Of a DNA stretch of 64,000 nucleotides, positions 1-21,145 are shown one piece after another. The position numbers and the translations under genes were made by a program. The notes beneath the pieces were generated by a model that was not told the DNA's origin, did not search any database, and saw only the letters and a program-made list of their open reading frames with translations. Where the stretch lies: contig NIVC01000838.1 of the NCBI GenBank assembly GCA_002269645.1, positions 124,001 through 188,000 of the forward strand. The letters are read 5' to 3'. This DNA comes from Macrostomum lignano. Its lineage: Eukaryota. Numbering within the stretch: the stretch's first letter is position 1; the number at the start of each line of letters is the position of its first letter.

Positions 1-589
1 CCCTCGTCGCATGTTGGAATCAAGTAGATTTTACCAGCTTGTCAGTACTCGTATTTCCTGTGGTGACGGAACTTCTCAGCAAGTGCTTTTAATATCCAGC
101 CTTTTAATTGTTGAAGTTAAAGAATCCAAAAGAATCTAGCTTGTACAAGAAGCAGTTTGTTAGCTGTATTTATCGTGGAAATATTTATATTAAGCTTGCA
201 CTACAATAAATTTGATCTACTTCAGAATTAGTGTTGAAAAAAGAAGAGCTTATTAAATTAGCTGCCACGTAACTAGGTGAGAAACTTATCTACTAGCGTA
301 AAATAGATAAAACAAAAAGCATCTCACAAGCACATGAAACAAAGCATTGTCAGCGTAGTTGGTAGGTCTTAGAAGCAAAAAAGTGCTATCAGCACTTTAC
401 ACTAAACTAGCATCTCGCATTGGCCTGTCAGGAATGTCCACTATACTAAAAATGAGTCGTCCTTATACAGTATTCGCTCGTATATCGGTCGTTAGGAATG
501 TTCTACCTAAAATTTCCAATGTTCATATACAAAAGTACTGTAACGTTCAACCTCTGCACACGCTCGATTCGAGCGCTTCGCGATTAAAG

Positions 590-3500
590 CTATTGGTCCA
601 AATTGGCCTTGGAAATGTTCGAGTCACCAAACCGATTCTCAATGACCTGAAACGATGAGTTAATATTTTGTAGACAGTTCTCATCCGCCGACAGCAAGCG
701 GCTTCTATCAGATAGCACCTGGAAAACTGCTGCGTCCGCACGCCGAACTTGAGCAGCCAAGTAATCCAGCATGTCGGCTGCGTCACCGGACTGCAGGTTC
801 CGCATCGACCTAGAATCTAGCTCAACAAACTCCTCCAACGGCGAAACCAAAGATGATGGTACACCAATACCAGATGAAGGCATTGAATATCCGTCAAGAG
901 TGGACAATGCCGAAACACCATCATAAAGCTCCGGACTAGGACTTGCAATGCCCTGCGAATACCGAGGACTAGACAAAGGGACCGGAAAAAGTGTCGACGC
1001 CGATTTCCGCTCCGAATCAATATCCTCCTCTTCTACTAGAGCTGAAGCAGCGCCTCTCTCATCTACGCGACGTCTGTACTCGCCCAGCTCCGAGTCGAGT
1101 CGCTGCAGCGCTACTCGCGTCGCATCTGGCTGCAGCGCCGCTCGCGACTGCTCGACCGAGGTCACGACCGAGTTGTCGAACGGGCCTCCGATGCTTCTAA
1201 GCCGCGACAGTCGATCCGCCATCAGTCTGGCCACTTCCTCGTTCATTGACCTGTCTGGCTGCGCCTGTTGTTCTACTACTGCTGCGTCGTCCGGTATCAC
1301 CTGCGTTTCCTCTTTCTCGTCCTCTGCTAAAGCGGCCGCCGTGGCGCCTCTCTCGTCTACGCGACGTCTGTACTCGCCCAGCTCCGAGTCGAGTCGCTGC
1401 AGCGCTACTCGCGTCGCATCTGGCTGCAGCGCCGCTCGCGACTGCTCGACCGAGGTCACGACCGAGTTGTCGAACGGGCCTCCGATGCTTCTAAGCCGCG
1501 ACAGTCGATCCGCCATCAGTCTGGCCACTTCCTCGTTCATTGACCTGTCTGGCTGCGCCTGTTGTTCTACTACTGCTGCGTCGTCCGGTATCACCTGCGT
1601 TTCCTCTTTCTCGTCCTCTGCTAAAGCGGCCGCCGTGGCGCCTCTCTCGTCTACGCGACGTCTGTACTCGCCCAGCTCCGAGTCGAGTCGCTGCAGCGCT
1701 ACTCGCGTCGCATCTGGCTGCAGCGCCGCTCGCGACTGCTCGACCGAGGTCACGACCGAGTTGTCGAACGGGCCTCCGATGCTTCTAAGCCGCGACAGTC
1801 GATCCGCCATCAGTCTGGCCACTTCCTCGTTCATTGACCTGTCTGGCTGCGCCTGTTGTTCTACTACTGCTGCGTCGTCCGGTATCACCTGCGTTTCCTC
1901 TTTCTCGTCCTCTGCTAAAGCGGCCGCCGTGGCGCCTCTCTCGTCTACGCGACGTCTGTACTCGCCCAGCTCCGAGTCGAGTCGCTGCAGCGCTACTCGC
2001 GTCGCATCTGGCTGCAGCGCCGCTCGCGACTGCTCGACCGAGGTCACGACCGAGTTGTCGAACGGGCCTCCGATGCTTCTAAGCCGCGACAGTCGATCCG
2101 CCATCAGTCTGGCCACTTCCTCGTTCATTGACCTGTCTGGCTGCGCCTGTTGTTCTACTACTGCTGCGTCGTCCGGTATCACCTGCGTTTCCTCTTTCTC
2201 GTCCTCTGCTAAAGCGGCCGCCGTGACGCCTCTCTCGTCTACGCGACGTCTGTACTCGCCCAGCTCCGAGTCGAGTCGCTGCAGCGCTACTCGCGTCGCA
2301 TCTGGCTGCAGCGCCGCTCGCGACTGCTCGACCGAGGTCACGACCGAGTTGTCGAACGGGCCTCCGATGCTTCTAAGCCGCGACAGTCGATCCGCCATCA
2401 GTCTGGCCACTTCCTCGTTCATTGACCTGTCTGGCTGCGCCTGTTGTTCTACTACTGCTGCGTCGTCCGGTATCACCTGCGTTTCCTCTTTCTCGTCCTC
2501 TGCTAAAGCGGCCGCCGTGGCGCCTCTCTCGTCTACGCGACGTCTGTACTCGCCCAGCTCCGAGTCGAGTCGCTGCAGCGCTACTCGCGTCGCATCTGGC
2601 TGCAGCGCCGCTCGCGACTGCTCGACCGAGGTCACGACCGAGTTGTCGAACGGGCCTCCGATGCTTCTAAGCCGCGACAGTCGATCCGCCATCAGTCTGG
2701 CCACTTCCTCGTTCATTGACCTGTCTGGCTGCGCCTGTTGTTCTACTACTGCTGCGTCGTCCGGTATCACCTGCGTTTCCTCTTTCTCGTCCTCTGCTAA
2801 AGCGGCCGCCGTGGCGCCTCTCTCGTCTACGCGACGTCTGTACTCGCCCAGCTCCGAGTCGAGTCGCTGCAGCGCTACTCGCGTCGCATCTGGCTGCAGC
2901 GCCGCTCGCGACTGCTCGACCGAGGTCACGACCGAGTTGTCGAACGGGCCTCCGATGCTTCTAAGCCGCGACAGTCGATCCGCCATCAGTCTGGCCACTT
3001 CCTCGTTCATTGACCTGTCTGGCTGCGCCTGTTGTTCTACTACTGCTGCGTCGTCCGGTATCACCTGCGTTTCCTCTTTCTCGTCCTCTGCTAAAGCGGC
3101 CGCCGTGGCGCCTCTCTCGTCTACGCGACGTCTGTACTCGCCCAGCTCCGAGTCGAGTCGCTGCAGCGCTACTCGCGTCGCATCTGGCTGCAGCGCCGCT
3201 CGCGACTGCTCGACCGAGGTCACGACCGAGTTGTCGAACGGGCCTCCGATGCTTCTAAGCCGCGACAGTCGATCCGCCATCAGTCTGGCCACTTCCTCGT
3301 TCATTGACCTGTCTGGCTGCGCCTGTTGTTCTACTACTGCTGCGTCGTCCGGTATCACCTGCGTTTCCTCTTTCTCGTCCTCTGCTAAAGCGGCCGCCGT
3401 GGCGCCTCTCTCGTCTACGCGACGTCTGTACTCGCCCAGCTCCGAGTCGAGTCGCTGCAGCGCTACTCGCGTCGCATCTGGCTGCAGCGCCGCTCGCGAC

Positions 3501-6500
3501 TGCTCGACCGAGGTCACGACCGAGTTGTCGAACGGGCCTCCGATGCTTCTAAGCCGCGACAGTCGATCCGCCATCAGTCTGGCCACTTCCTCGTTCATTG
3601 ACCTGTCTGGCTGCGCCTGTTGTTCTACTACTGCTGCGTCGTCCGGTATCACCTGCGTTTCCTCTTTCTCGTCCTCTGCTAAAGCGGCCGGGGCGCCTCT
3701 CTCATTTACGCGACGTCTGTACTCGCCCAGCTCCGAGTCGAGTCGCTGCAGCGCTACTCGCGTCGCATCTGGCTGCAGCGCCGCTCGCGACTGCTCGACC
3801 GAGGTCACGACCGAGTTGTCGAACGGGCCTCCGATGCTTCTAAGCCGCGACAGTCGATCCGCCATCAGTCTGGCCACTTCCTCGTTCATTGACCTGTCTG
3901 GCTGCGCCTGTTGTTCTACTACTGCTGCGTCGTCCGGTATCACCTGCGTTTCCTCTTTCTCGTCCTCTGCTAAAGCGGCCGCCGTGGCGCCTCTCTCGTC
4001 TACGCGACGTCTGTACTCGCCCAGCTCCGAGTCGAGTCGCTGCAGCGCTACTCGCGTCGCATCTGGCTGCAGCGCCGCTCGCGACTGCTCGACCGAGGTC
4101 ACGACCGAGTTGTCGAACGGGCCTCCGATGCTTCTAAGCCGCGACAGTCGATCCGCCATCAGTCTGGCCACTTCCTCGTTCATTGACCTGTCTGGCTGCG
4201 CCTGTTGTTCTACTACTGCTGCGTCGTCCGGTATCACCTGCGTTTCCTCTTTCTCGTCCTCTGCTAAAGCGGCCGCCGTGGCGCCTCTCTCGTCTACGCG
4301 ACGTCTGTACTCGCCCAGCTCCGAGTCGAGTCGCTGCAGCGCTACTCGCGTCGCATCTGGCTGCAGCGCCGCTCGCGACTGCTCGACCGAGGTCACGACC
4401 GAGCTGTCGAACGGGCCTCCGATGCTTCTAAGCTGCGACAGTCGATCCGCCATCAGTCTGGCCACTTCCTCGTTCAATAGCTCTTCTAAAGTGTCAAACT
4501 TAAGTGACATTTTCGTTGGATTAATAACGTCGAGTCCTTGATGGTGGACCTGGTCGTCAGCGATTTCGGAATGGCTGTCTATTTCGACTATTAGTGGCCC
4601 AAGTTGAGGTAGTTTTGAGACTGTGCGGTCTTGTTGCTCCCAAACTCCCGTAGATAGTATATACGTTTTTGTTGTATCGAAGTCGGTTGTGAAGTACTTT
4701 AATAGTTGTTTCATTCGAAAAATAGACCTTCTTGCCGCTCTAGCCTTCTTTTTATCTTGCATATGACAGTCTAACATTTCGTCTGCCTTAGCGAATAGCA
4801 TCGCGTACTTTTGCCAAGTGTTGCCTTGAAAGTTGGTACTTAGATACGCTTTAAGTAGCTTTTCTCTCGTTTCTTTCGAAAAATATCTTAACTCACGATG
4901 ATGAACTGGAATACGGCAGAGAGCGCACTGAATGACTTCAAGATGATTTTTGTCCGCCTGAACAATATATTGAATTGATTTTAGCAAAGCATACTCGAAT
5001 TTCGTCAAAGATTTGCTTAGCCTGGCGTATCTTTCAATAGCCAACACTGTCTCGCGGTAACTACGAGACGCTTCAGTTATATGGCTCTGCAGTGTCTCAC
5101 TTATTTTCAGGAGACATACGTGAACGCCAGACCAGTACTGACCGTACCGCTGAAATGTCTTCACGGCTGAGAAATATTGCTCAGAAAAATAATGCAGACC
5201 GACACAGGCAGCGTCTGCGGGAACAACATCCGCGTCACCGAACCTCTCAATCCACAATGAGAGATATGAAAATGATGCCTCGTTGCGCTTTCTAATCTCG
5301 GACCAAAGAGGTTCTTGCTGAACCGCGAAAAGAATTTCTTTAACAGGACCACAAACCAAATCCTCTCTAAACAATGAAGTCATTAGTTGAAGCTGACGCA
5401 CTAACTGTCGAAGGGCAGCTCCAACAAACTGTGCCTGAAGTACGCAGCAAAATGCCGTAAGACCACGATCAACCCTATAACGAAACCAATCAAAAACGCT
5501 CAAAAGCCGTTCAATGCTGCACACCATGGAATCCGTCAAATAAAAATGTTTAGAAAAAGATGTCAAATTTTCATCAAATGCTTCAGAGAGGATGTATGCT
5601 TCAGCATCTGCTTCTGGCTCTTCCTCCTCCTGTTCTGGCGCTGCAGCTTCCGCCTGTTCAGCTGCGGTGATCTCATCAAGGCGGCGCTTGTACTCTGCCA
5701 GCTCCGCGTTCAGTCGCTGCATCGCTCCGGGTCTAGCTGAATGCTGCAGCGCGGCTCGCGCCTGCTCCACCGACGTCAGCACCGAGGCGTCGAACAGTCC
5801 GATGCGATTCAGACGCGCCAGTCGCTCGATCGTAGCGTCAAACAGTGCCGCGTTCATTGCCGCGTCCTCGACGACCGGCTCAGCTTCTGGCTCTTCCTCC
5901 TCCTGTTCTGGCGCTGCAGCTTCCGCCTGTTCAGCTGCGGTGATCTCATCAAGGCGGCGCTTGTACTCTGCCAGCTCCGCGTTCAGTCGCTGCATCGCTC
6001 CGGGTCTAGCTGAATGCTGCAGCGCGGCTCGCGCCTGCTCCACCGACGTCAGCACCGAGGCGTCGAACAGTCCGATGCGATTCAGACGCGCCAGTCGCTC
6101 GATCGTAGCGTCAAACAGTGCCGCGTTCATTGCCGCGTCCTCGACGACCGGCTCAGCTTCTGGCTCTTCCTCCTCCTGTTCTGGCGCTGCAGCTTCCGCC
6201 TGTTCAGCTGCGGTGATCTCATCAAGGCGGCGCTTGTACTCTGCCAGCTCCGCGTTCAGTCGCTGCATCGCTCCGGGTCTAGCTGAATGCTGCAGCGCGG
6301 CTCGCGCCTGCTCCACCGACGTCAGCACCGAGGCGTCGAACAGTCCGATGCGATTCAGACGCGCCAGTCGCTCGATCGTAGCGTCAAACAGTGCCGCGTT
6401 CATTGCCGCGTCCTCGACGACCGGCTCAGCTTCTGGCTCTTCCTCCTCCTGTTCTGGCGCTGCAGCTTCCGCCTGTTCAGCTGCGGTGATCTCATCAAGG

Positions 6501-9500
6501 CGGCGCTTGTACTCTGCCAGCTCCGCGTTCAGTCGCTGCATCGCTCCGGGTCTAGCTGAATGCTGCAGCGCGGCTCGCGCCTGCTCCACCGACGTCAGCA
6601 CCGAGGCGTCGAACAGTCCGATGCGATTCAGACGCGCCAGTCGCTCGATCGTAGCGTCAAACAGTGCCGCGTTCATTGCCGCGTCCTCGACGACCGGCTC
6701 AGCTTCTGGCTCTTCCTCCTCCTGTTCTGGCGCTGCAGCTTCCGCCTGTTCAGCTGCGGTGATCTCATCAAGGCGGCGCTTGTACTCTGCCAGCTCCGCG
6801 TTCAGTCGCTGCATCGCTCCGGGTCTAGCTGAATGCTGCAGCGCGGCTCGCGCCTGCTCCACCGACGTCAGCACCGAGGCGTCGAACAGTCCGATGCGAT
6901 TCAGACGCGCCAGTCGCTCGATCGTAGCGTCAAACAGTGCCGCGTTCATTGCCGCGTCCTCGACGACCGGCTCAGCTTCTGGCTCTTCCTCCTCCTGTTC
7001 TGGCGCTGCAGCTTCCGCCTGTTCAGCTGCGGTGATCTCATCAAGGCGGCGCTTGTACTCTGCCAGCTCCGCGTTCAGTCGCTGCATCGCTCCGGGTCTA
7101 GCTGAATGCTGCAGCGCGGCTCGCGCCTGCTCCACCGACGTCAGCACCGAGGCGTCGAACAGTCCGATGCGATTCAGACGCGCCAGTCGCTCGATCGTAG
7201 CGTCAAACAGTGCCGCGTTCATTGCCGCGTCCTCGACGACCGGCTCAGCTTCTGGCTCTTCCTCCTCCTGTTCTGGCGCTGCAGCTTCCGCCTGTTCAGC
7301 TGCGGTGATCTCATCAAGGCGGCGCTTGTACTCTGCCAGCTCCGCGTTCAGTCGCTGCATCGCTCCGGGTCTAGCTGAATGCTGCAGCGCGGCTCGCGCC
7401 TGCTCCACCGACGTCAGCACCGAGGCGTCGAACAGTCCGATGCGATTCAGACGCGCCAGTCGCTCGATCGTAGCGTCAAACAGTGCCGCGTTCATTGCCG
7501 CGTCCTCGACGACCGGCTCAGCTTCTGGCTCTTCCTCCTCCTGTTCTGGCGCTGCAGCTTCCGCCTGTTCAGCTGCGGTGATCTCATCAAGGCGGCGCTT
7601 GTACTCTGCCAGCTCCGCGTTCAGTCGCTGCATCGCTCCGGGTCTAGCTGAATGCTGCAGCGCGGCTCGCGCCTGCTCCACCGACGTCAGCACCGAGGCG
7701 TCGAACAGTCCGATGCGATTCAGACGCGCCAGTCGCTCGATCGTAGCGTCAAACAGTGCCGCGTTCATTGCCGCGTCCTCGACGACCGGCTCAGCTTCTG
7801 GCTCTTCCTCCTCCTGTTCTGGCGCTGCAGCTTCCGCCTGTTCAGCTGCGGTGATCTCATCAAGGCGGCGCTTGTACTCTGCCAGCTCCGCGTTCAGTCG
7901 CTGCATCGCTCCGGGTCTAGCTGAATGCTGCAGCGCGGCTCGCGCCTGCTCCACCGACGTCAGCACCGAGGCGTCGAACAGTCCGATGCGATTCAGACGC
8001 GCCAGTCGCTCGATCGTAGCGTCAAACAGTGCCGCGTTCATTGCCGCGTCCTCGACGACCGGCTCAGCTTCTGGCTCTTCCTCCTCCTGTTCTGGCGCTG
8101 CAGCTTCCGCCTGTTCAGCTGCGGTGATCTCATCAAGGCGGCGCTTGTACTCTGCCAGCTCCGCGTTCAGTCGCTGCATCGCTCCGGGTCTAGCTGAATG
8201 CTGCAGCGCGGCTCGCGCCTGCTCCACCGACGTCAGCACCGAGGCGTCGAACAGTCCGATGCGATTCAGACGCGCCAGTCGCTCGATCGTAGCGTCAAAC
8301 AGTGCCGCGTTCATTGCCGCGTCCTCGACGACCGGCTCAGCTTCTGGCTCTTCCTCCTCCTGTTCTGGCGCTGCAGCTTCCGCCTGTTCAGCTGCGGTGA
8401 TCTCATCAAGGCGGCGCTTGTACTCTGCCAGCTCCGCGTTCAGTCGCTGCATCGCTCCGGGTCTAGCTGAATGCTGCAGCGCGGCTCGCGCCTGCTCCAC
8501 CGACGTCAGCACCGAGGCGTCGAACAGTCCGATGCGATTCAGACGCGCCAGTCGCTCGATCGTAGCGTCAAACAGTGCCGCGTTCATTGCCGCGTCCTCG
8601 ACGACCGGCTCAGCTTCTGGCTCTTCCTCCTCCTGTTCTGGCGCTGCAGCTTCCGCCTGTTCAGCTGCGGTGATCTCATCAAGGCGGCGCTTGTACTCTG
8701 CCAGCTCCGCGTTCAGTCGCTGCATCGCTCCGGGTCTAGCTGAATGCTGCAGCGCGGCTCGCGCCTGCTCCACCGACGTCAGCACCGAGGCGTCGAACAG
8801 TCCGATGCGATTCAGACGCGCCAGTCGCTCGATCGTAGCGTCAAACAGTGCCGCGTTCATTGCCGCGTCCTCGACGACCGGCTCAGCTTCTGGCTCTTCC
8901 TCCTCCTGTTCTGGCGCTGCAGCTTCCGCCTGTTCAGCTGCGGTGATCTCATCAAGGCGGCGCTTGTACTCTGCCAGCTCCGCGTTCAGTCGCTGCATCG
9001 CTCCGGGTCTAGCTGAATGCTGCAGCGCGGCTCGCGCCTGCTCCACCGACGTCAGCACCGAGGCGTCGAACAGTCCGATGCGATTCAGACGCGCCAGTCG
9101 CTCGATCGTAGCGTCAAACAGTGCCGCGTTCATTGCCGCGTCCTCGACGACCGGCTCAGCTTCTGGCTCTTCCTCCTCCTGTTCTGGCGCTGCAGCTTCC
9201 GCCTGTTCAGCTGCGGTGATCTCATCAAGGCGGCGCTTGTACTCTGCCAGCTCCGCGTTCAGTCGCTGCATCGCTCCGGGTCTAGCTGAATGCTGCAGCG
9301 CGGCTCGCGCCTGCTCCACCGACGTCAGCACCGAGGCGTCGAACAGTCCGATGCGATTCAGACGCGCCAGTCGCTCGATCGTAGCGTCAAACAGTGCCGC
9401 GTTCATTGCCGCGTCCTCGACGACCGGCTCAGCTTCTGGCTCTTCCTCCTCCTGTTCTGGCGCTGCAGCTTCCGCCTGTTCAGCTGCGGTGATCTCATCA

Positions 9501-12500
9501 AGGCGGCGCTTGTACTCTGCCAGCTCCGCGTTCAGTCGCTGCATCGCTCCGGGTCTAGCTGAATGCTGCAGCGCGGCTCGCGCCTGCTCCACCGACGTCA
9601 GCACCGAGGCGTCGAACAGTCCGATGCGATTCAGACGCGCCAGTCGCTCGATCGTAGCGTCAAACAGTGCCGCGTTCATTGCCGCGTCCTCGACGACCGG
9701 CTCAGCTTCTGGCTCTTCCTCCTCCTGTTCTGGCGCTGCAGCTTCCGCCTGTTCAGCTGCGGTGATCTCATCAAGGCGGCGCTTGTACTCTGCCAGCTCC
9801 GCGTTCAGTCGCTGCATCGCTCCGGGTCTAGCTGAATGCTGCAGCGCGGCTCGCGCCTGCTCCACCGACGTCAGCACCGAGGCGTCGAACAGTCCGATGC
9901 GATTCAGACGCGCCAGTCGCTCGATCGTAGCGTCAAACAGTGCCGCGTTCATTGCCGCGTCCTCGACGACCGGCTCAGCTTCTGGCTCTTCCTCCTCCTG
10001 TTCTGGCGCTGCAGCTTCCGCCTGTTCAGCTGCGGTGATCTCATCAAGGCGGCGCTTGTACTCTGCCAGCTCCGCGTTCAGTCGCTGCATCGCTCCGGGT
10101 CTAGCTGAATGCTGCAGCGCGGCTCGCGCCTGCTCCACCGACGTCAGCACCGAGGCGTCGAACAGTCCGATGCGATTCAGACGCGCCAGTCGCTCGATCG
10201 TAGCGTCAAACAGTGCCGCGTTCATTGCCGCGTCCTCGACGACCGGCTCAGCTTCTGGCTCTTCCTCCTCCTGTTCTGGCGCTGCAGCTTCCGCCTGTTC
10301 AGCTGCGGTGATCTCATCAAGGCGGCGCTTGTACTCTGCCAGCTCCGCGTTCAGTCGCTGCATCGCTCCGGGTCTAGCTGAATGCTGCAGCGCGGCTCGC
10401 GCCTGCTCCACCGACGTCAGCACCGAGGCGTCGAACAGTCCGATGCGATTCAGACGCGCCAGTCGCTCGATCGTAGCGTCAAACAGTGCCGCGTTCATTG
10501 CCGCGTTTTCTTTTTGGTTTCCTGCTTTTGTTCGTATTGGAATTCTATTGTGTCTGCGATTTCGTTTCGGAATGGTAGCATTTTTGGGAGTGAGTCTGTT
10601 GTTTTTTGTTGTATTTGCCATAATCCGGTCGAAAGTATGTAGTTTCTAGTGTGATCAAAGTCTTTGGTGTAAATATGCAGTAGTCGCTTGAACCTTCCCA
10701 GTGCTTGTCGTCCTACTGGTGCACTTTGACCTTTAGTGAGCTGATGCTGAAGGCCTTTCTCTGCATGCAAAAATATGGATAAAAACTTTTTCCAAGTGGA
10801 CCCCTCCGTTAATAGTAAACGAGGCGCTTGATAAAGAAAGCTTCTAGTTGACTCAGTTAGAAATTCATATCGGAGTTTTTTAAGAGGAATCCGGAGTAAA
10901 GAGCATTGGATCGCCTCACAATAGTAGTCTGTAGCTTCTGAGATATGGCCTATCGCAGTTTTCATTGACAGTTCAAAACGTACCATGTCGCTGTTTAGAA
11001 GTGCGTACTTGTTTAGCATGGCTAAACAATTAGACAATTCTGCTGAAAAATCTGCAACCAAGAATTTATTCATTGATACCATCGATATTTGAAGACCGTG
11101 CCAATATGATCTTCTACTATGTAAAATTTCCAGTTGACGATGTATCGAATTAAAAAATTCTGATAAATTCACGTTCCTACACGACGACAGTTGATTCTCC
11201 GAATTCGATGCAATTTCTATCCAATATGAGATTTGAGCAACTTCAGCAGTATGCCGTTCTGAGATCCATGACCAAAACTTACACCGCATTAGCTCTACCA
11301 TAGTCTGACGAAGAGGCGAAACAAGGAACTGGATCAACTCGGCAGACCTTGCGATACGTAGCTGCTGTAAAACTCCTTTCACAAGAAAACTCGAATGGCA
11401 AAGCTGGACCCCGGATGCTAGGCTACGAATGCCAGGCCGAAGCTCTTGCAAAAACATTGGGCGAGCGTCCACAGTTTATGGAGACCATGTACCAGAGGCA
11501 TAGGAGACAAGGAATCAGACGGATAAACAGAGCACAAGAAGTTAATCTGGTCCACTAAGTCTTTCCAACGCTGCTGCTCGGTTACCTTGTTTTCCTGACC
11601 AATAACCGTCAACATTGACGCTTGCTTCTTGTAAGAATCCAACGCACCGTCGAGGCGTTCCATCGATCCGGGTGTTGCACCACTCGACAGCAGAGCCCGT
11701 GCCATTCGACAGATGTCAGCACCGACTCGTCATACAGTCCAGACGCCTTCAACTTGTTCAGCCTCGAGATCATCAGCTCCGTCACAGCCGCGCTGGTCGG
11801 TGCTGCTTCCTCTGGCGGCTGCTTTGACTCGACACGCTTTCCAACCTCGTCCGTGGAAACCTGTGGCTTCTCGACCTCAGCTGCAGGAGCTTCTGACTTT
11901 GGAGTCTCGTCCGGTTGTACGCCATCTTCCTTGTCAACGACAGCCGCGGCCAGAAGAGCGTCTCTATCTGACGCTTGCTTCTTGTAAGAATCCAACGCAC
12001 CGTCGAGGCGTTCCATCGATCCGGGTGTTGCACCACTCGACAGCAGAGCCCGTGCCATTCCGACAGATGTCAGCACCGACTCGTCATACAGTCCAGACGC
12101 CTTCAACTTGTTCAGCCTCGAGATCATCAGCTCCGTCACAGCCGCGCTGGTCGGTGCTGCTTCCTCTGGCGGCTGCTTTGACTCGACACGCTTTCCAACC
12201 TCGTCCGTGGAAACCTGTGGCTTCTCGACCTCAGCTGCAGGAGCTTCTGACTTTGGAGTCTCGTCCGGTTGTACGCCATCTTCCTTGTCAACGACAGCCG
12301 CGGCCAGAAGAGCGTCTCTATCTGACGCTTGCTTCTTGTAAGAATCCAACGCACCGTCGAGGCGTTCCATCGATCCGGGTGTTGCACCACTCGACAGCAG
12401 AGCCCGTGCCATTCCGACAGATGTCAGCACCGACTCGTCATACAGTCCAGACGCCTTCAACTTGTTCAGCCTCGAGATCATCAGCTCCGTCACAGCCGCG

Positions 12501-15500
12501 CTGGTCGGTGCTGCTTCCTCTGGCGGCTGCTTTGACTCGACACGCTTTCCAACCTCGTCCGTGGAAACCTGTGGCTTCTCGACCTCAGCTGCAGGAGCTT
12601 CTGACTTTGGAGTCTCGTCCGGTTGTACGCCATCTTCCTTGTCAACGACAGCCGCGGCCAGAAGAGCGTCTCTATCTGACGCTTGCTTCTTGTAAGAATC
12701 CAACGCACCGTCGAGGCGTTCCATCGATCCGGGTGTTGCACCACTCGACAGCAGAGCCCGTGCCATTCCGACAGATGTCAGCACCGACTCGTCATACAGT
12801 CCAGACGCCTTCAACTTGTTCAGCCTCGAGATCATCAGCTCCGTCACAGCCGCGCTGGTCGGTGCTGCTTCCTCTGGCGGCTGCTTTGACTCGACACGCT
12901 TTCCAACCTCGTCCGTGGAAACCTGTGGCTTCTCGACCTCAGCTGCAGGAGCTTCTGACTTTGGAGTCTCGTCCGGTTGTACGCCATCTTCCTTGTCAAC
13001 GACAGCCGCGGCCAGAAGAGCGTCTCTATCTGACGCTTGCTTCTTGTAAGAATCCAACGCACCGTCGAGGCGTTCCATCGATCCGGGTGTTGCACCACTC
13101 GACAGCAGAGCCCGTGCCATTCCGACAGATGTCAGCACCGACTCGTCATACAGTCCAGACGCCTTCAACTTGTTCAGCCTCGAGATCATCAGCTCCGTCA
13201 CAGCCGCGCTGGTCGGTGCTGCTTCCTCTGGCGGCTGCTTTGACTCGACACGCTTTCCAACCTCGTCCGTGGAAACCTGTGGCTTCTCGACCTCAGCTGC
13301 AGGAGCTTCTGACTTTGGAGTCTCGTCCGGTTGTACGCCATCTTCCTTGTCAACGACAGCCGCGGCCAGAAGAGCGTCTCTATCTGACGCTTGCTTCTTG
13401 TAAGAATCCAACGCACCGTCGAGGCGTTCCATCGATCCGGGTGTTGCACCACTCGACAGCAGAGCCCGTGCCATTCCGACAGATGTCAGCACCGACTCGT
13501 CATACAGTCCAGACGCCTTCAACTTGTTCAGCCTCGAGATCATCAGCTCCGTCACAGCCGCGCTGGTCGGTGCTGCTTCCTCTGGCGGCTGCTTTGACTC
13601 GACACGCTTTCCAACCTCGTCCGTGGAAACCTGTGGCTTCTCGACCTCAGCTGCAGGAGCTTCTGACTTTGGAGTCTCGTCCGGTTGTACGCCATCTTCC
13701 TTGTCAACGACAGCCGCGGCCAGAAGAGCGTCTCTATCTGACGCTTGCTTCTTGTAAGAATCCAACGCACCGTCGAGGCGTTCCATCGATCCGGGTGTTG
13801 CACCACTCGACAGCAGAGCCCGTGCCATTCCGACAGATGTCAGCACCGACTCGTCATACAGTCCAGACGCCTTCAACTTGTTCAGCCTCGAGATCATCAG
13901 CTCCGTCACAGCCGCGCTGGTCGGTGCTGCTTCCTCTGGCGGCTGCTTTGACTCGACACGCTTTCCAACCTCGTCCGTGGAAACCTGTGGCTTCTCGACC
14001 TCAGCTGCAGGAGCTTCTGACTTTGGAGTCTCGTCCGGTTGTACGCCATCTTCCTTGTCAACGACAGCCGCGGCCAGAAGAGCGTCTCTATCTGACGCTT
14101 GCTTCTTGTAAGAATCCAACGCACCGTCGAGGCGTTCCATCGATCCGGGTGTTGCACCACTCGACAGCAGAGCCCGTGCCATTCCGACAGATGTCAGCAC
14201 CGACTCGTCATACAGTCCAGACGCCTTCAACTTGTTCAGCCTCGAGATCATCAGCTCCGTCACAGCCGCGCTGGTCGGTGCTGCTTCCTCTGGCGGCTGC
14301 TTTGACTCGACACGCTTTCCAACCTCGTCCGTGGAAACCTGTGGCTTCTCGACCTCAGCTGCAGGAGCTTCTGACTTTGGAGTCTCGTCCGGTTGTACGC
14401 CATCTTCCTTGTCAACGACAGCCGCGGCCAGAAGAGCGTCTCTATCTGACGCTTGCTTCTTGTAAGAATCCAACGCACCGTCGAGGCGTTCCATCGATCC
14501 GGGTGTTGCACCACTCGACAGCAGAGCCCGTGCCATTCCGACAGATGTCAGCACCGACTCGTCATACAGTCCAGACGCCTTCAACTTGTTCAGCCTCGAG
14601 ATCATCAGCTCCGTCACAGCCGCGCTGGTCGGTGCTGCTTCCTCTGGCGGCTGCTTTGACTCGACACGCTTTCCAACCTCGTCCGTGGAAACCTGTGGCT
14701 TCTCGACCTCAGCTGCAGGAGCTTCTGACTTTGGAGTCTCGTCCGGTTGTACGCCATCTTCCTTGTCAACGACAGCCGCGGCCAGAAGAGCGTCTCTATC
14801 TGACGCTTGCTTCTTGTAAGAATCCAACGCACCGTCGAGGCGTTCCATCGATCCGGGTGTTGCACCACTCGACAGCAGAGCCCGTGCCATTCCGACAGAT
14901 GTCAGCACCGACTCGTCATACAGTCCAGACGCCTTCAACTTGTTCAGCCTCGAGATCATCAGCTCCGTCACAGCCGCGCTGGTCGGTGCTGCTTCCTCTG
15001 GCGGCTGCTTTGACTCGACACGCTTTCCAACCTCGTCCGTGGAAACCTGTGGCTTCTCGACCTCAGCTGCAGGAGCTTCTGACTTTGGAGTCTCGTCCGG
15101 TTGTACGCCATCTTCCTTGTCAACGACAGCCGCGGCCAGAAGAGCGTCTCTATCTGACGCTTGCTTCTTGTAAGAATCCAACGCACCGTCGAGGCGTTCC
15201 ATCGATCCGGGTGTTGCACCACTCGACAGCAGAGCCCGTGCCATTCCGACAGATGTCAGCACCGACTCGTCATACAGTCCAGACGCCTTCAACTTGTTCA
15301 GCCTCGAGATCATCAGCTCCGTCACAGCCGCGCTGGTCGGTGCTGCTTCCTCTGGCGGCTGCTTTGACTCGACACGCTTTCCAACCTCGTCCGTGGAAAC
15401 CTGTGGCTTCTCGACCTCAGCTGCAGGAGCTTCTGACTTTGGAGTCTCGTCCGGTTGTACGCCATCTTCCTTGTCAACGACAGCCGCGGCCAGAAGAGCG

Positions 15501-18500
15501 TCTCTATCTGACGCTTGCTTCTTGTAAGAATCCAACGCACCGTCGAGGCGTTCCATCGATCCGGGTGTTGCACCACTCGACAGCAGAGCCCGTGCCATTC
15601 CGACAGATGTCAGCACCGACTCGTCATACAGTCCAGACGCCTTCAACTTGTTCAGCCTCGAGATCATCAGCTCCGTCACAGCCGCGCTGGTCGGTGCTGC
15701 TTCCTCTGGCGGCTGCTTTGACTCGACACGCTTTCCAACCTCGTCCGTGGAAACCTGTGGCTTCTCGACCTCAGCTGCAGGAGCTTCTGACTTTGGAGTC
15801 TCGTCCGGTTGTACGCCATCTTCCTTGTCAACGACAGCCGCGGCCAGAAGAGCGTCTCTATCTGACGCTTGCTTCTTGTAAGAATCCAACGCACCGTCGA
15901 GGCGTTCCATCGATCCGGGTGTTGCACCACTCGACAGCAGAGCCCGTGCCATTCCGACAGATGTCAGCACCGACTCGTCATACAGTCCAGACGCCTTCAA
16001 CTTGTTCAGCCTCGAGATCATCAGCTCCGTCACAGCCGCGCTGGTCGGTGCTGCTTCCTCTGGCGGCTGCTTTGACTCGACACGCTTTCCAACCTCGTCC
16101 GTGGAAACCTGTGGCTTCTCGACCTCAGCTGCAGGAGCTTCTGACTTTGGAGTCTCGTCCGGTTGTACGCCATCTTCCTTGTCAACGACAGCCGCGGCCA
16201 GAAGAGCGTCTCTATCTGACGCTTGCTTCTTGTAAGAATCCAACGCACCGTCGAGGCGTTCCATCGATCCGGGTGTTGCACCACTCGACAGCAGAGCCCG
16301 TGCCATTCCGACAGATGTCAGCACCGACTCGTCATACAGTCCAGACGCCTTCAACTTGTTCAGCCTCGAGATCATCAGCTCCGTCACAGCCGCGCTGGTC
16401 GGTGCTGCTTCCTCTGGCGGCTGCTTTGACTCGACACGCTTTCCAACCTCGTCCGTGGAAACCTGTGGCTTCTCGACCTCAGCTGCAGGAGCTTCTGACT
16501 TTGGAGTCTCGTCCGGTTGTACGCCATCTTCCTTGTCAACGACAGCCGCGGCCAGAAGAGCGTCTCTATCTGACGCTTGCTTCTTGTAAGAATCCAACGC
16601 ACCGTCGAGGCGTTCCATCGATCCGGGTGTTGCACCACTCGACAGCAGAGCCCGTGCCATTCCGACAGATGTCAGCACCGACTCGTCATACAGTCCAGAC
16701 GCCTTCAACTTGTTCAGCCTCGAGATCATCAGCTCCGTCACAGCCGCGCTGGTCGGTGCTGCTTCCTCTGGCGGCTGCTTTGACTCGACACGCTTTCCAA
16801 CCTCGTCCGTGGAAACCTGTGGCTTCTCGACCTCAGCTGCAGGAGCTTCTGACTTTGGAGTCTCGTCCGGTTGTACGCCATCTTCCTTGTCAACGACAGC
16901 CGCGGCCAGAAGAGCGTCTCTATCTGACGCTTGCTTCTTGTAAGAATCCAACGCACCGTCGAGGCGTTCCATCGATCCGGGTGTTGCACCACTCGACAGC
17001 AGAGCCCGTGCCATTCCGACAGATGTCAGCACCGACTCGTCATACAGTCCAGACGCCTTCAACTTGTTCAGCCTCGAGATCATCAGCTCCGTCACAGCCG
17101 CGCTGGTCGGTGCTGCTTCCTCTGGCGGCTGCTTTGACTCGACACGCTTTCCAACCTCGTCCGTGGAAACCTGTGGCTTCTCGACCTCAGCTGCAGGAGC
17201 TTCTGACTTTGGAGTCTCGTCCGGTTGTACGCCATCTTCCTTGTCAACGACAGCCGCGGCCAGAAGAGCGTCTCTATCTGACGCTTGCTTCTTGTAAGAA
17301 TCCAACGCACCGTCGAGGCGTTCCATCGATCCGGGTGTTGCACCACTCGACAGCAGAGCCCGTGCCATTCCGACAGATGTCAGCACCGACTCGTCATACA
17401 GTCCAGACGCCTTCAACTTGTTCAGCCTCGAGATCATCAGCTCCGTCACAGCCGCGCTGGTCGGTGCTGCTTCCTCTGGCGGCTGCTTTGACTCGACACG
17501 CTTTCCAACCTCGTCCGTGGAAACCTGTGGCTTCTCGACCTCAGCTGCAGGAGCTTCTGACTTTGGAGTCTCGTCCGGTTGTACGCCATCTTCCTTGTCA
17601 ACGACAGCCGCGGCCAGAAGAGCGTCTCTATCTGACGCTTGCTTCTTGTAAGAATCCAACGCACCGTCGAGGCGTTCCATCGATCCGGGTGTTGCACCAC
17701 TCGACAGCAGAGCCCGTGCCATTCCGACAGATGTCAGCACCGACTCGTCATACAGTCCAGACGCCTTCAACTTGTTCAGCCTCGAGATCATCAGCTCCGT
17801 CACAGCCGCGCTGGTCGGTGCTGCTTCCTCTGGCGGCTGCTTTGACTCGACACGCTTTCCAACCTCGTCCGTGGAAACCTGTGGCTTCTCGACCTCAGCT
17901 GCAGGAGCTTCTGACTTTGGAGTCTCGTCCGGTTGTACGCCATCTTCCTTGTCAACGACAGCCGCGGCCAGAAGAGCGTCTCTATCTGACGCTTGCTTCT
18001 TGTAAGAATCCAACGCACCGTCGAGGCGTTCCATCGATCCGGGTGTTGCACCACTCGACAGCAGAGCCCGTGCCATTCCGACAGATGTCAGCACCGACTC
18101 GTCATACAGTCCAGACGCCTTCAACTTGTTCAGCCTCGAGATCATCAGCTCCGTCACAGCCGCGCTGGTCGGTGCTGCTTCCTCTGGCGGCTGCTTTGAC
18201 TCGACACGCTTTCCAACCTCGTCCGTGGAAACCTGTGGCTTCTCGACCTCAGCTGCAGGAGCTTCTGACTTTGGAGTCTCGTCCGGTTGTACGCCATCTT
18301 CCTTGTCAACGACAGCCGCGGCCAGAAGAGCGTCTCTATCTGACGCTTGCTTCTTGTAAGAATCCAACGCACCGTCGAGGCGTTCCATCGATCCGGGTGT
18401 TGCACCACTCGACAGCAGAGCCCGTGCCATTCCGACAGATGTCAGCACCGACTCGTCATACAGTCCAGACGCCTTCAACTTGTTCAGCCTCGAGATCATC

Positions 18501-18580
18501 AGCTCCGTCACAGCCGCGCTGGTCGGTGCTGCTTCCTCTGGCGGCTGCTTTAAAGCTTTTTCGGAAGATTTTCTTTCCAT
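590..18580 (-). CDS. Giant intronless tandem-repeat protein of unknown family (~5997 aa if three 1-nt deletions are repaired); seen as ORFs 11609-18580, 11418-11705, 10495-11472 and 590-10621
   Basis: The four same-strand ORFs overlap and join by three -1 shifts. All array units are multiples of 3 (354, 273, 294 bp) and keep the frame. The three repeat families share a protein core, and the two spacer domains are homologous at the protein level. The ATG at 18580 follows an in-frame TAA two codons upstream. Confidence 0.75.
1050..4476 (-). repeat. Coding tandem array 3: 294-bp (98-aa) unit, 12 cores
   Basis: Periodicity of 294 seen directly (shadow ORFs at 1246, 1540, 1834 ...). One unit is 291 bp (variant near 3690). 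Point variants lie near 2226 and in the 4400-4435 copy. Confidence 0.95.
4480..5600 (-). other. Unique spacer domain copy A2 (~370 aa) of the giant protein
   Basis: Non-repetitive, AT-richer and fully open. Motifs YWSG, IQCALCRIP, TWQKY and DFDTTKTYILSTGVW match copy A1. Confidence 0.8.
5610..10506 (-). repeat. Coding tandem array 2: 273-bp (91-aa) unit, 18 copies
   Basis: Shadow ORFs every 273 bp from 5741 to 10382. Translated units are identical. Confidence 0.95.
10510..11610 (-). other. Unique spacer domain copy A1 (~365 aa), interrupted by indels
   Basis: Motifs YWHG, IQCSLLRIP, TWKKF and DFDHTRNYILSTGLW align with A2. Confidence 0.75.
11616..18551 (-). repeat. Coding tandem array 1: 354-bp (118-aa) unit, ~19.6 copies
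   Basis: Shadow ORFs every 354 bp. Units look identical except for one missing C near 11707 in the last copy (gccattcgac vs gccattccgac). Confidence 0.95.
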
Positions 18581-18738
18581 TGCTTTTTAGCTTTTTAATG
18601 CAAAGCAACGGTATTATAAAATCCGTATAGTTTGGTTACTTCAAGGAACATGTTTTAGACTTGTTATCTTGTGGCGTTGAAGTTAAATAACGTAATTTTT
18701 GGCCATAAAAATTAACGATGAATGTTGATTAGGAAAGG

Positions 18739-18746: not shown

Positions 18747-19989
18747 AATTATGGCTCAGAGATCAAGCGCGACTTTTAGCGGTTGCGGCCTACATGTAAC
18801 CATAGACACTACTATATATGTAGGAGATTGCGTGTTTTTCAAACATTCCTATGCCTTGAGTCTTAGGAAGTGTTGTGTAGGGACCACACAGCATGCCGTG
18901 GTTGACTACAGAGAATTGAGCTAACACAGAGCGCCAATATTTGTATTTTAAGCCGAAGCCAAAATCCCAATTCCTCAGTCTCCTACTTCTCGACCATCGG
19001 CAAGAAGTCAAAAAGATAGGAGTACGAGTATATAGGGTATACAAAGCATTCATGCAATCTATTTCTTAATATGGAAGTATCAAGAAATTTAATGGGCTGA
19101 AGAAACTACAGATGTCCGTTCATTTATTCAATGTGTAGTGAGGCATCTGTCGTATTTGAAAATATCGTAAAAAGAACCGACTCGACATATAACAATCGGC
19201 TTTAAAGTTTGGGAAATTATGCTACAAATACTCGCAGACACAGGTAATAAATTAGTAAGTCGTTGAATTGCAAATATTTGTTTCTAGCCAGACCGACGGA
19301 GGAACTCTTCGACTGCGACTGGCTGTGTGTTGAGACCGTCTCATTGAACAAATTCAGCCGCTGAAGGCTATGCTGGAGCATTGGAAACCAGGCACTAAGC
19401 TGTATATAATGGAGAGGGCAAAGCCACAACGTACACCTGTCAATTATTCAATATGTCAGGCTGTGTGACTTTATAAACGCATCTTTTCGTCATTCAAGAC
19501 CCATTCTTTAGCCGCAGAATGCCGAATTGTCCTATGCTGCCAGCTACGAGTATTCGCTCGATATGCGCAAATAGACTACTAACGATGAGAAGCCTGTAAG
19601 TAGTTATACTAAATAAATAAACGCTAGAAAAGTACAAGAAAGTGTTTCGAAAGTTTAGACACATGCTAAACGTTTGTTCTCTTAATTGGTTCGCACTAAA
19701 TGAACAGGAAAAAAACTAGAGATAAGTATGTAAAATAGGAATAATAATTATTAGTTGGCCGAGAACAAGCATCTTTGAGGGCGGAGATAACGGTTTCGCT
19801 AAAACATAGTCAAATTTTGAAATTAATTGTGACGTTCGACACAAAGAAGCTTTTATATAAATGCGAGGCATTTAAAACATTTTTCGTTCAACAAAAAACA
19901 GAGTTCAAGATTTTTAGGTGGATGGATTTAGCAGGTTTAGGCTCGGTTTAGAAGGCTCAAGATTGAGGTGGTTCATGGGTTCAGTAGGT

Positions 19990-21145
19990 TCCAGGATCAG
20001 TGGGTTCAGGGATCAGTGGGTTAAGAGATCAGTGGGTTAAGAGATCAGTGGGTTCAGGGATCAGTAGGTTCAGGGATCAGTGGGTTCAGGGATCAGTTGG
20101 ATAAGAGATCAGTGGATTAAGAGATCAGTGGGTTCAGGGATCAGTAGGTTCAGGGATCAGTGGGTTCAGGGATCAGTGGGCTCAGGGATCAGTGGGTTCA
20201 GGGATCAGTTGGATAAGAGATCAGTGGATTAAGAGATCAGTGGGTTCAGGGATCAGTAGGTTCAGGGATCAGTGGGTTAAGAGATCAGTGGGTTCAGGGA
20301 TCAGTGGGCTCAGGGATCAGTGGGTTCAGGGATCAGTTGGATAAGAGATCAGTGGATTAAGAGATCAGTGGGTTCAGGGATCAGTGGGTTCAGGGATCAG
20401 TGGGTTAAGAGATCAGTGGGTTCAGGGATCAGTGGGTTAAGAGATCAGTGGGCTCAGGGATCAGTGGGCTCAGGGATCAGTGGGTTCAGGGATCGGTGGG
20501 TTCAGGGATCAGTGGGTTAAGAGATCAGTGGGCTCAGGGATCAGTGGGCTCAGGGATCAGTGGGTTCAGGGATCGGTGGGTTCAGGGATCAGTGGGTTAA
20601 GAGATCAGTGGGTTCAGGGATCAGTGGGTTAAGAGATCAGTGGGCTCAGGGATCAGTGGGTTAAGAGATCAGTGGGTTCAGGGATCAGTGGGTTCAGGGA
20701 TCAGTGAGTTCAGGGATCAATGGGTTCAGGGTTCAGTGGGTTCAGGGATCAGTGGGCTCAGGGATCAGTGAGTTCAGGGATCAGTGAGTTCAGGGATCAG
20801 TGGGTTCAGGGTTCAGCGGGTTCAGGGATCAGTGGGCTCAGGGATCAGTGAGTTCAGGGATCAGTGAGTTCAGGGATCAGTGGGTTAAGGGATCAGTGGG
20901 CTCAGGGATCAGTGAGTTCAGGGATCAGTGAGTTCAGGGATCAGTGGGTTAAGGGATCAGTGGGCTCAGGGATCAGTGGGTTCAAGGATCAGTGGGTTCA
21001 AGGATCAGTGGGCTCAGGGATCAGTGGGCTCAGGAATCAGTGGGTTCAAGGATCAGTGGGCTCAGGGATCAGTGGGCTCAGGGATCAGTGGGTTCAGGGA
21101 TCAGTGGGTTCAGGGATCAGTGGGCTCAGGAATCAGTGGGTTCAT
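19990..21145. repeat. 16-bp minisatellite (GGGATCAGTGGGTTCA)n downstream of the epsilon-tubulin stop
   Basis: Direct periodicity, about 70 copies. Confidence 0.95.

What the first reader, a model, noticed from the sequence alone, without database searches (positions are those of the whole stretch)
4480..11610. Nested duplication: an ancient [repeat + ~365-aa domain A] cassette was duplicated, then each repeat expanded independently
Seen: spacer A1 (YWHG..FELS..IQCSLLRIP..TWKKF..DFDHTRNYILSTGLWQ..LPKM) aligns colinearly with A2 (YWSG..FEYA..IQCALCRIP..TWQKY..DFDTTKTYILSTGVWE..LPQL). They are highly diverged, yet units within each array are almost identical. This implies two very different time scales in one gene. 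Domain A looks like a globular all-alpha domain I cannot assign, and it may carry the catalytic or binding function.
Basis: partly seen in the sequence, partly recalled or inferred. Interest (0 to 1): 0.7.

Follow-up and report, generated by a model that had tools for sequence, protein, structure and literature searches.

The report
Giant repeat-array gene of a flatworm
The region is the middle of one very large gene of the flatworm Macrostomum lignano, found only in that species. Three internally identical repeat arrays are separated by two old, diverged copies of an unassigned helical domain; this is a clear but ordinary case of repeats being kept identical by recombination.

Summary
A1 (10507-11615) and A2 (4477-5609), both on the minus strand, are homologous (BLASTP E=8e-33, 26% identity over 288 aa). 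The array between them has 17 full 273-nt units that are 100% identical.

The window is contig NIVC01000838.1 of the Macrostomum lignano assembly Mlig_3_7. The whole feature is larger than the finding. It starts at the ATG at 18580 and runs R3 x19.6, A1, R2 x17.9, A2, R1 x11.7, a 154-aa tail, and a stop at 590.

Three frame breaks around A1 are 1-nt deletions private to this contig. Two other copies of the locus carry the missing bases. With them the reading is one 5,997-codon intronless ORF (650 kDa, pI 4.6).

R units of the three arrays are homologous (38-56% identity). AlphaFold2 predicts a three-helix core, and an acidic linker follows it. Copy numbers differ up to 2.6-fold between contigs.

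Neither A nor R has any Pfam, PDB or out-of-species relative, even in an exhaustive HMMER scan. The only relative is a small neighbouring gene that shares A's last ~90 residues.

The best reading is unequal crossing-over: it duplicated A once long ago and still homogenises each array. No evidence supports a catalytic role. This is a known kind of evolution acting on a new orphan gene.

The parts
18578..18580 (-). Start codon of the giant gene (MERKSSEKALKQPPEE...). It leads straight into the first R3 unit. The upstream 1.3 kb is AT-rich (GC 0.38) with no ORF and no third A domain.
11616..18551 (-). Array R3: a 354-nt (118-aa) unit x19.6. All 19 full units are 100% identical in DNA. Each unit is a ~62-aa helical core plus a ~55-aa acidic/Pro-rich linker. 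GC3 is 0.59.
11707..11707 (-). Frame break 1: a 1-nt deletion (GG>G) in the last R3 unit, relative to the array consensus and to contigs NIVC01002842.1 and NIVC01002841.1.
10507..11615 (-). Domain A1 (~370 aa, pI 9.5, GC3 0.38). The 325-codon ORF 10495-11472 covers most of it. It is predicted all-alpha by homology with A2.
11472..11472 (-). Frame break 2: a 1-nt deletion (ACTGGTGG>ACTGTGG) near the N-terminus of A1. It is absent from both other copies.
   Evidence: proteins P0002 and P0008 read through it
10515..10515 (-). Frame break 3: a 1-nt deletion in an A run (A6>A5) at the A1-to-R2 junction. It is absent from both other copies. With the extra A the reading is ...QETKKENAAMNAALFD...
5610..10506 (-). 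Array R2: a 273-nt (91-aa) unit x17.9. All 17 full units are 100% identical. GC3 is 0.67.
4477..5609 (-). Domain A2 (~378 aa, pI 7.7, GC3 0.40), in frame with R2 and R1. It is homologous to A1 (E=8e-33).
1050..4476 (-). Array R1: a 294-nt (98-aa) unit x11.7, 99% identical. The first (edge) unit carries two substitutions that are also seen in contig NIVC01002842.1. One unit has a 3-nt deletion. AlphaFold2 gives three helices (residues 2-19, 25-38, 44-77), with pLDDT about 90 over residues 1-60.
590..1054 (-). Non-repetitive acidic C-terminal tail (154 aa, pI 4.2) and the TAG stop at 590-592. It has no similarity to A, to R, or to Pfam.
948..18630 (+). Three long antisense ORFs confined to the arrays (948-4541, 5592-10649, 11713-18630). 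They are Ser/Ala/Cys-rich mirror readings of stop-free units and are not considered genes.

Best explanation
The region is part of one intronless gene of Macrostomum lignano on the minus strand (ATG 18580 to stop 590). It has about 5,997 codons at this contig's copy numbers.

The encoded protein is about 650 kDa, acidic (pI 4.6), and has no signal peptide or membrane segment. Its layout is [R3]x19.6 - A1 - [R2]x17.9 - A2 - [R1]x11.7 - tail.

Each R unit is a ~60-aa three-helix module followed by a 25-55-aa acidic, probably disordered, linker. This gives about 49 'beads on a string'. The beads are interrupted by two ~370-aa helical domains, one basic and one near-neutral.

Inferred history:
1. 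An ancestral R-A-R gene underwent one unequal crossover between its two flanking arrays. That produced R-A-R-A-R.
2. This was long ago, because synonymous sites between A1 and A2, and between the arrays, are saturated.
3. Since then A1 and A2 have been single-copy and diverged to 26% identity.
4. Each array has been kept internally identical by continuing unequal sister-chromatid or allelic exchange and gene conversion (concerted evolution). The same process changes the copy number.
5. The high GC3 of the arrays (0.59-0.68, against 0.38-0.40 in A and 0.37-0.38 total GC in the flanks) fits GC-biased conversion.

The three frame breaks around A1 in this contig are most likely consensus errors of the PacBio/Canu assembly.

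Function is inferred only, with low confidence (~0.25). The protein may be a cytoplasmic, multivalent structural or scaffolding protein in which many identical helical modules give avidity or length, and the A domains are unique interaction sites. The last ~90 residues of A form a module also used by a small neighbouring gene.
For: Shown:
- A1/A2 homology.
- Homology of R units between arrays, with R2 intermediate (56%, 47.5%, 38% identity).
- 100% identical units within R2 and R3, and an edge-unit variant in R1 shared by two contigs.
- The same unit sequence but different copy numbers in three contigs of the same assembly: R3 is 19.6, 16.6 and 25.6; R2 is 17.9, 46.9 and at least 36.5; R1 is 11.7 and 23.6.
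- All three frame breaks are 1-nt deletions missing from both other copies, and each other copy has its own private 1-nt deletions.
- Adding the three bases gives one ORF of 5,997 codons with no stop.
- The third copy is open for 6,743 codons through R3-A1-R2.
- A1 differs between contigs by 5 synonymous and 3 non-synonymous changes (my count from the differences listed).
- The sense frame has pN/pS of 0.65 between arrays.
- Codon identity at conserved residues is near the codon-usage expectation for A1-A2 and R2-R3, so synonymous sites are saturated.
- GC3 contrast between arrays and A domains.
- Three-helix prediction for R, with pLDDT about 90 over the core.
- No hydrophobic segment: the maximum Kyte-Doolittle 19-residue score is 1.39.
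- The GenBank gene models over the locus come from RNA-seq-based transcript assembly, so the locus is transcribed.
- The assembly method was Canu plus Pilon, and the assembly is known to be redundant.
Against: - Perfect unit identity and the copy numbers come from a 2017 PacBio CLR assembly polished with short reads. Polishing with multi-mapping reads can erase rare unit variants. Arrays of 5-13 kb can be mis-sized.
- No full-length transcript or peptide was seen. The annotated models are fragments (187-1,010 aa).
- With only three arrays, 'R2 is intermediate' is weak support for the unequal-crossover origin.
- pN/pS of 0.65 shows only mild constraint on R. The wobble-aligned antisense frame scores similarly, so the coding strand is fixed by A1, A2 and the tail, not by the arrays.
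- The functional statement rests on architecture alone.
Confidence: 0.75

Rival explanations
1. A single [one R unit + A] cassette was duplicated, and each R unit was later amplified independently and recently into an array. Under this model, within-array identity measures the age of the expansion.
For: Zero divergence within R2 and R3. The arrays are mutually diverged. A1/A2 are old.
Against: - There are three arrays but only two A domains, and an array lies on both sides of each A.
- Copy number differs up to 2.6-fold between copies of the locus that share exactly the same unit and differ by 0.5% or less in A1. The arrays therefore expand and contract continuously, so identity does not date a single expansion.
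- An edge-unit variant is retained in two contigs. This is the usual mark of homogenisation by unequal exchange.
Confidence: 0.2
2. The locus in this contig is a decaying pseudogene, or three separate genes. On this reading the three frame breaks are real: the R3 ORF ends at 11609, A1 is a stranded fragment, and a new ORF starts at ATG 10621.
For: The window as sequenced has the three breaks. The annotators called separate partial proteins (P0009, P0012) on this contig.
Against: - All three breaks are single-base deletions in short base runs or adjacent repeated bases (GG, a GG doublet within ACTGGTGG, A6). They sum to -3.
- Both other copies have the bases. One of them (L004) differs from the window by only one substitution in 1.7 kb but by these three indels.
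- Every contig has different private deletions, which is typical of consensus error.
- A1 keeps a 325-codon open frame at 41% GC, and 5 of its 8 differences between contigs are synonymous.
Confidence: 0.08
3. The arrays are essentially non-coding satellites that happen to lack stop codons. Only the A-like segments, or nothing, are protein-coding.
For: The window is saturated with satellites. Both strands are open across every array. pN/pS between arrays is only 0.65, and an antisense frame matches it.
Against: - The same frame runs from an ATG through three arrays of different unit length (354, 273 and 294 nt, all multiples of 3), both A domains and the tail, to a single stop.
- The units keep a conserved 62-aa core across arrays while the linkers vary.
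- The core is confidently predicted as three helices.
- RNA-based gene models lie on this strand.
Confidence: 0.04
4. Domain A is itself a fossil stretch of about six R units that escaped homogenisation. On this reading the whole gene is one ancient R array with two degenerate islands.
For: A is predicted all-helical. One stretch of A2 (IERYARLSKSLTKFEYALLKSIQ) resembles the R core (IERLARLNRIGLFDASVLTSVEQ): hhalign E=0.016, and 8 of 500 shuffles score as well.
Against: hhalign probability is 2.8%. The aligned A1 segment does not score (-4.2 bits). No internal repeats were found in A1 or A2 by self-BLAST. Composition is very different (pI 9.5/7.7 against 4.5; GC3 0.4 against 0.6-0.7).
Confidence: 0.07

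Closest known systems
Protein-coding tandem arrays (VNTR/macrosatellite type) kept uniform by concerted evolution. Examples are the kringle IV-2 array of human LPA, mucin VNTR domains, spider silk spidroins and Chironomus Balbiani-ring genes (from my own knowledge, not tested here).
   Same: In-frame head-to-tail units of hundreds of nucleotides. Near-zero divergence within an array, but large divergence between paralogous arrays. Variable copy number. Non-repetitive domains flank or interrupt the arrays. The gene is very large and intron-poor.
   Different: No sequence or domain relationship to any of them. The protein lacks a signal peptide, whereas those examples are secreted. Three separately homogenised arrays of one unit family sit in a single ORF, interleaved with two old copies of a unique domain.
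BOX15_Mlig024800 (P0003/P0004, 376-442 aa), an uncharacterised M. lignano protein encoded about 5.6-7.5 kb downstream on the same strand of the same contig.
   Same: It shares the C-terminal ~90 residues of domain A (TW.K[FY]...R..R[FYM]K.LL..[FY]...FD[TH][TD]..Y...(11-14 residues)...LP.[LM].P). Scores: hmmsearch E=1.2e-5 against 1.84 billion proteins, hhalign probability 93% with E=3e-7, BLASTP against A1 E=1e-9. It is followed by an acidic stretch, as in the giant gene.
   Different: It has no R unit. No similarity to the first ~250 residues of A was detected. It has introns. It is outside the window.
Repeat proteins built of three-helix bundles (spectrin repeats, staphylococcal protein A domains, MIT domains).
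   Same: The R core is predicted as three helices of about 60 residues, repeated many times along one chain.
   Different: No Pfam hit. No significant PDB sequence hit (best E=0.016, to designed cages/KDPG aldolase). No significant Foldseek hit (best E=1.0). The units are separated by long acidic linkers rather than by continuous helices.

Membership tests
Coding tandem array under concerted evolution | Head-to-tail units whose length is a multiple of three, all in one reading frame | tested here: met
   Units are 354, 273 and 294 nt. One frame is open across all arrays.
Coding tandem array under concerted evolution | Identity within an array far exceeds identity between paralogous arrays | tested here: met
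   99-100% within arrays, against 50-70% nucleotide and 38-56% protein identity between array cores.
Coding tandem array under concerted evolution | Copy number varies between alleles or copies while the unit sequence is shared | tested here: met
   R3 is 19.6/16.6/25.6, R2 is 17.9/46.9/at least 36.5, and R1 is 11.7/23.6, with identical R2 and R3 units. Caveat: all are contigs of one CLR assembly.
Coding tandem array under concerted evolution | Edge units escape homogenisation | tested here: met
   The first R1 unit carries 2 substitutions in both contigs. Terminal partial units diverge into A or the tail.
Any curated protein family for domain A (Pfam-A) | Score above the gathering threshold of a Pfam model | tested here: not met
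   0 families for A2. The best hit for A1 is GN3L_Grn1 at 15.6 bits, against a cut-off of 22.3. No PDB sequence match with E<1.
HeH/SAP/Ish1-type helix-extended-helix motif (considered for the R core) | Significant match to the Ish1 or SAP profile | tested here: not met
   Ish1 E=0.19 at 12.5 bits, against a cut-off of 26.6. SAP was not reported.
Spectrin-like or other known three-helix repeat | Sequence-profile or structural match to a solved three-helix repeat | tested here: not met
   Best Foldseek E=1.0. No Pfam hit.
Processed or decaying pseudogene | Disabling mutations shared by independent copies, and loss of constraint | tested here: not met
   The breaks are private to each contig. 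Synonymous to non-synonymous changes in A1 are 5:3.
Secreted repeat protein (mucin/adhesive/silk type) | N-terminal signal peptide | tested here: not met
   The N-terminus MERKSSEKALKQPPEEAAP is hydrophilic. The maximum 19-residue hydropathy anywhere is 1.39. No dedicated signal-peptide predictor was available.

The most novel reading that the evidence does not exclude
A and R form a gene family found only in Macrostomum, with no detectable relative among 1.84 billion representative proteins. On this reading the giant gene grew from a small local gene like its neighbour Mlig024800, by fusion with a helical repeat and one unequal crossover. Its module number now differs two- to three-fold between the redundant (allelic or homeologous) copies within a single inbred, neopolyploid line. 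It would then be a natural case of very fast, possibly functional, length evolution of a 6,000-9,000-aa intracellular protein.
Probability: 0.3. Interest if true: 0.45.

Novelty: new member of a known kind. Interest (0 to 1): 0.3.

Why it matters
This is a clean example of two evolutionary clocks in one ORF. Single-copy domains are saturated with change, next to arrays with no change at all. It sits in a tractable, transgenic, neopolyploid flatworm.

It shows that current annotation breaks a ~6,000-codon gene into five or more partial 'hypothetical proteins'. The causes are assembly indels and repeat collapse.

It also defines two new orphan modules: the R three-helix unit, and domain A with a separable C-terminal sub-module.

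The mechanism (concerted evolution of coding repeats) is well known, and no function is established. It is useful for annotation and for studies of repeat dynamics, but it is not a conceptual surprise.

Tried and rejected
- Pfam on A1, A2, the R1-R3 units, the tail and the neighbour P0004 found nothing above threshold.
- Word-indexed searches of 5.8 billion proteins with A2, the A1+A2 profile and the R profile returned only M. lignano fragments of this locus.
- An exhaustive HMMER scan of 1.84 billion representatives with the A profile returned only the locus itself and the neighbour family.
- PDB sequence searches with the A and R profiles gave nothing significant.
- The AlphaFold2 model of A2 from a 2-sequence alignment had pLDDT 39 and pTM 0.23. 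I did not use it for fold search, because the matches would be meaningless.
- Foldseek of the confident R model against the PDB gave a best E of 1.0, to generic helical bundles.
- I looked for a third A domain upstream of R3 or in the C-terminal tail. There is none.
- I looked for an R unit in the neighbour protein P0004. There is none.
- I tested whether A is made of degenerate R units. The result was not significant.
- I considered introns as the cause of the frame breaks. I rejected this because the breaks are single-base differences from the other contigs.
- The lower pS between arrays than between A1 and A2 first suggested younger arrays. It is explained by biased codon usage.
- I searched papers and supplements for gene IDs Mlig002418, 011518, 024800, 027191 and 012374 to find expression data. 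There were no occurrences.

Full report
**Origin of the window**

The only database protein matching domain A2 was a hypothetical protein of the flatworm Macrostomum lignano (BOX15_Mlig002418g1, 100% identity). A locus fetched through a neighbouring gene (L003, from contig NIVC01000838.1 of assembly GCA_002269645.1, Mlig_3_7) is 100% identical to window 1-4962 over 4,962 bases. The window is therefore part of that 435-kb contig.

The assembly was made from PacBio reads with Canu. It was polished with Pilon using Illumina DNA and RNA reads. It is known to be redundant, with 180 Mb in duplicated blocks of at least 95% identity (PMC5730564).

**Check of the observation**

On the minus strand there are three large tandem arrays:

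| Array | Window coordinates | Unit (nt) | Copies |
|---|---|---|---|
| R3 | 11616-18551 | 354 | 19.6 |
| R2 | 5610-10506 | 273 | 17.9 |
| R1 | 1050-4476 | 294 | 11.7 |

- All 19 full R3 units and all 17 full R2 units are identical base for base.
- R1 has a few variants. One is the first, edge unit.
- Between the arrays lie A1 (10507-11615) and A2 (4477-5609).
- A1 and A2 align colinearly with BLASTP E=8e-33 (26% identity, 51% positives, 288 aa).

**The full feature**

The reading frame starts at an ATG at 18580, directly in front of the first R3 unit. The 1.3 kb upstream is AT-rich and closed in all frames, so there is no third A domain. After R1 comes a 154-aa acidic tail and a stop at 590-592. 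The tail has no similarity to A or R. The architecture is R3-A1-R2-A2-R1-tail.

**Is it one gene?**

In the window the frame is broken three times around A1. Comparison with a second copy of the locus (NIVC01002842.1; L002) shows that each break is a single-base deletion in the window:
- GG>G at 11707.
- ACTGGTGG>ACTGTGG at 11472.
- A6>A5 at 10515.

The second copy has its own, different single-base deletions, in A1 (10667, 10540) and in A2 (5208, 5051).

A third copy (NIVC01002841.1; L004) carries all three bases that the window lacks. It has none of the second copy's deletions. It differs from the window by one substitution in 1.7 kb. It is open for 6,743 codons through R3, A1 and R2. It has yet another private GG>G deletion 40 nt after the ATG.

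Private one-base deletions, mostly in short base runs and different in every contig, are what consensus error in a CLR assembly looks like. Inserting the three bases in a script gives one ORF of 5,997 codons with a single terminal stop.

A1 differs between contigs by five synonymous and three non-synonymous substitutions (read from the differences). It also keeps a 325-codon open frame at 41% GC.

The GenBank models over the locus (P0001, P0002, P0008-P0013) are partial. They derive from RNA-seq-based transcript assembly, so the locus is transcribed. I conclude, with about 0.9 confidence, that this is one gene and that the breaks are artefacts.

**The repeat unit**

The consensus units of the three arrays are homologous:

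| Pair | BLASTP E | Identity |
|---|---|---|
| R1-R2 | 2e-19 | 56% |
| R2-R3 | 1e-17 | 47.5% |
| R1-R3 | 6e-14 | 38% |

- The shared part is a ~62-aa core. The rest is an acidic, Ala/Glu/Pro-rich linker of 25-55 aa that differs between arrays.
- AlphaFold2 on the three-sequence alignment predicts three helices (residues 2-19, 25-38, 44-77). pLDDT is about 90 over residues 1-60 and drops below 60 in the linker.
- Nothing known matches: no Pfam family, no significant PDB sequence, no significant Foldseek hit (best E=1.0), and no protein outside M. lignano.

**Domain A**

- No Pfam family matched, and no PDB sequence.
- An exhaustive HMMER scan of 1.84 billion representative proteins with the A1+A2 profile found only the locus itself and one other family, P0003 (E=1.2e-5).
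- The AlphaFold2 model is all-helical but unusable (pLDDT 39). I did not run a fold search on it.
- P0003/P0004 is BOX15_Mlig024800, a 376-442-aa uncharacterised M. lignano protein.
- It shares only the last ~90 residues of A: hhalign probability 93% with E=3e-7, and BLASTP against A1 E=1e-9.
- One of its copies lies about 5.6-7.5 kb downstream of the giant gene, on the same strand of the same contig, just outside the window.

Domain A therefore has a separable C-terminal sub-module, which has a stand-alone relative next door. No catalytic motif or known fold was found.

**Time scales**

- Between A1 and A2, dN is 0.95 and pS is 0.76, which is saturated.
- Between array cores pS is lower (0.40-0.69). 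This reflects the strongly GC-biased codon usage of the arrays.
- At residues conserved between two sequences, codon identity is close to what codon usage alone predicts: A1-A2 26 observed against 25.1 expected, R2-R3 16 against 16.0, R1-R2 25 against 20.7.
- All between-cassette comparisons are therefore old. Within R2 and R3 there is no difference at all across 4.6 and 6.7 kb.

**Mechanism**

The R-A-R-A-R layout is what a single unequal crossover between the two arrays flanking one A would produce. Three observations fit this:
- R2 is intermediate between R1 and R3.
- Both A-to-R junctions enter the unit at the start of helix 1.
- The R-to-A exits are at different phases (read directly from the translations).

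Since then each array has been homogenised on its own. Three contigs share exactly the same R2 and R3 units, but their copy numbers differ:

| Array | NIVC01000838.1 (window) | NIVC01002842.1 | NIVC01002841.1 |
|---|---|---|---|
| R3 | 19.6 | 16.6 | 25.6 |
| R2 | 17.9 | 46.9 | at least 36.5 |
| R1 | 11.7 | 23.6 | not seen |

An edge-unit variant of R1 is retained in two contigs. GC3 is 0.59-0.68 in the arrays, against 0.38-0.40 in A1 and A2 and 0.37-0.38 total GC in the flanks. That fits GC-biased gene conversion in recombining arrays, but this is an inference.

Caveat: Pilon polishing with multi-mapping reads can make units look more uniform than they are, and array lengths from CLR assemblies are uncertain.

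**Strand and coding**

Between arrays the sense frame has pN/pS of 0.65 and no stops. The wobble-aligned antisense frame scores similarly. The long antisense ORFs are not excluded by the arrays alone. They are excluded because they end at the array borders, whereas the sense frame continues through A1, A2 and the tail.

**Function**

Function is not established. The protein has no signal peptide and no hydrophobic segment. It is acidic overall (pI 4.6), while A1 is basic (9.5) and A2 near neutral (7.7). My best guess, at about 0.25 confidence, is a cytoplasmic multivalent structural or scaffold protein. No expression data were found for the gene IDs in the papers and supplements searched.

**Verdict**

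The phenomenon (concerted evolution of coding tandem arrays beside diverging single-copy domains) is a known kind. The gene and its two modules are new and restricted to this lineage. Interest is moderate to low.

Noticed in passing
window 19970-64000: The rest of the window is packed with short-unit satellites and microsatellites. Examples: a 16-mer x73 at 19970-21144, a 21-mer x83 at 21616-23354, a 34-mer x166 at 52527-58184, a 34-mer x40 at 46172-47514, and GACA/AGAC/TAAC/GGAGA runs. The same 16-mer and 21-mer arrays lie upstream of the gene in contig NIVC01002842.1.
   Followed up: partly
window ~23400-23986 (-): A tubulin C-terminal domain exon (Pfam Tubulin_C, E=5e-18). Its open frame runs on into the 21-mer satellite, giving a spurious 797-aa ORF.
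   Followed up: partly
window 29165-29701 (-), 59292-59744 (+), 35157-36338 (-): Other probable exons or genes: a cytochrome b5-like heme/steroid-binding domain protein, a three-EF-hand protein, and a Pro-rich protein with one C2H2 finger and a weak bromodomain-like match.
   Followed up: no
L003 10001-12424 (contig NIVC01000838.1, ~5-7.5 kb beyond window position 1): The small intron-containing gene BOX15_Mlig024800g3 shares the C-terminal ~90-aa module of domain A. It lies on the same strand, downstream of the giant gene. Further copies (g1/g2) are on another contig of 347 kb.
   Followed up: partly
L001 10001-13739; L003 1-3353: The deposited annotation cuts the giant gene into at least five partial 'hypothetical proteins'. 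Apparent introns are placed inside the arrays; for example, a 470-aa product is called from a 3.7-kb span. This is probably an artefact of short-read transcript assembly over identical units.
   Followed up: partly
window 5040-5110 (-), inside A2: A 23-residue stretch of A2 (IERYARLSKSLTKFEYALLKSIQ) resembles the R core (IERLARLNRIGLFDASVLTSVEQ). The match is statistically weak: hhalign E=0.016 with probability 2.8%, and 8 of 500 shuffles score as well.
   Followed up: yes
L004 ~1605 (contig NIVC01002841.1): The third copy of the gene has its own single-base deletion (GG>G) 40 nt after the ATG. Every one of the three contigs therefore carries different private 1-nt deletions, mostly in short base runs.
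   Followed up: yes
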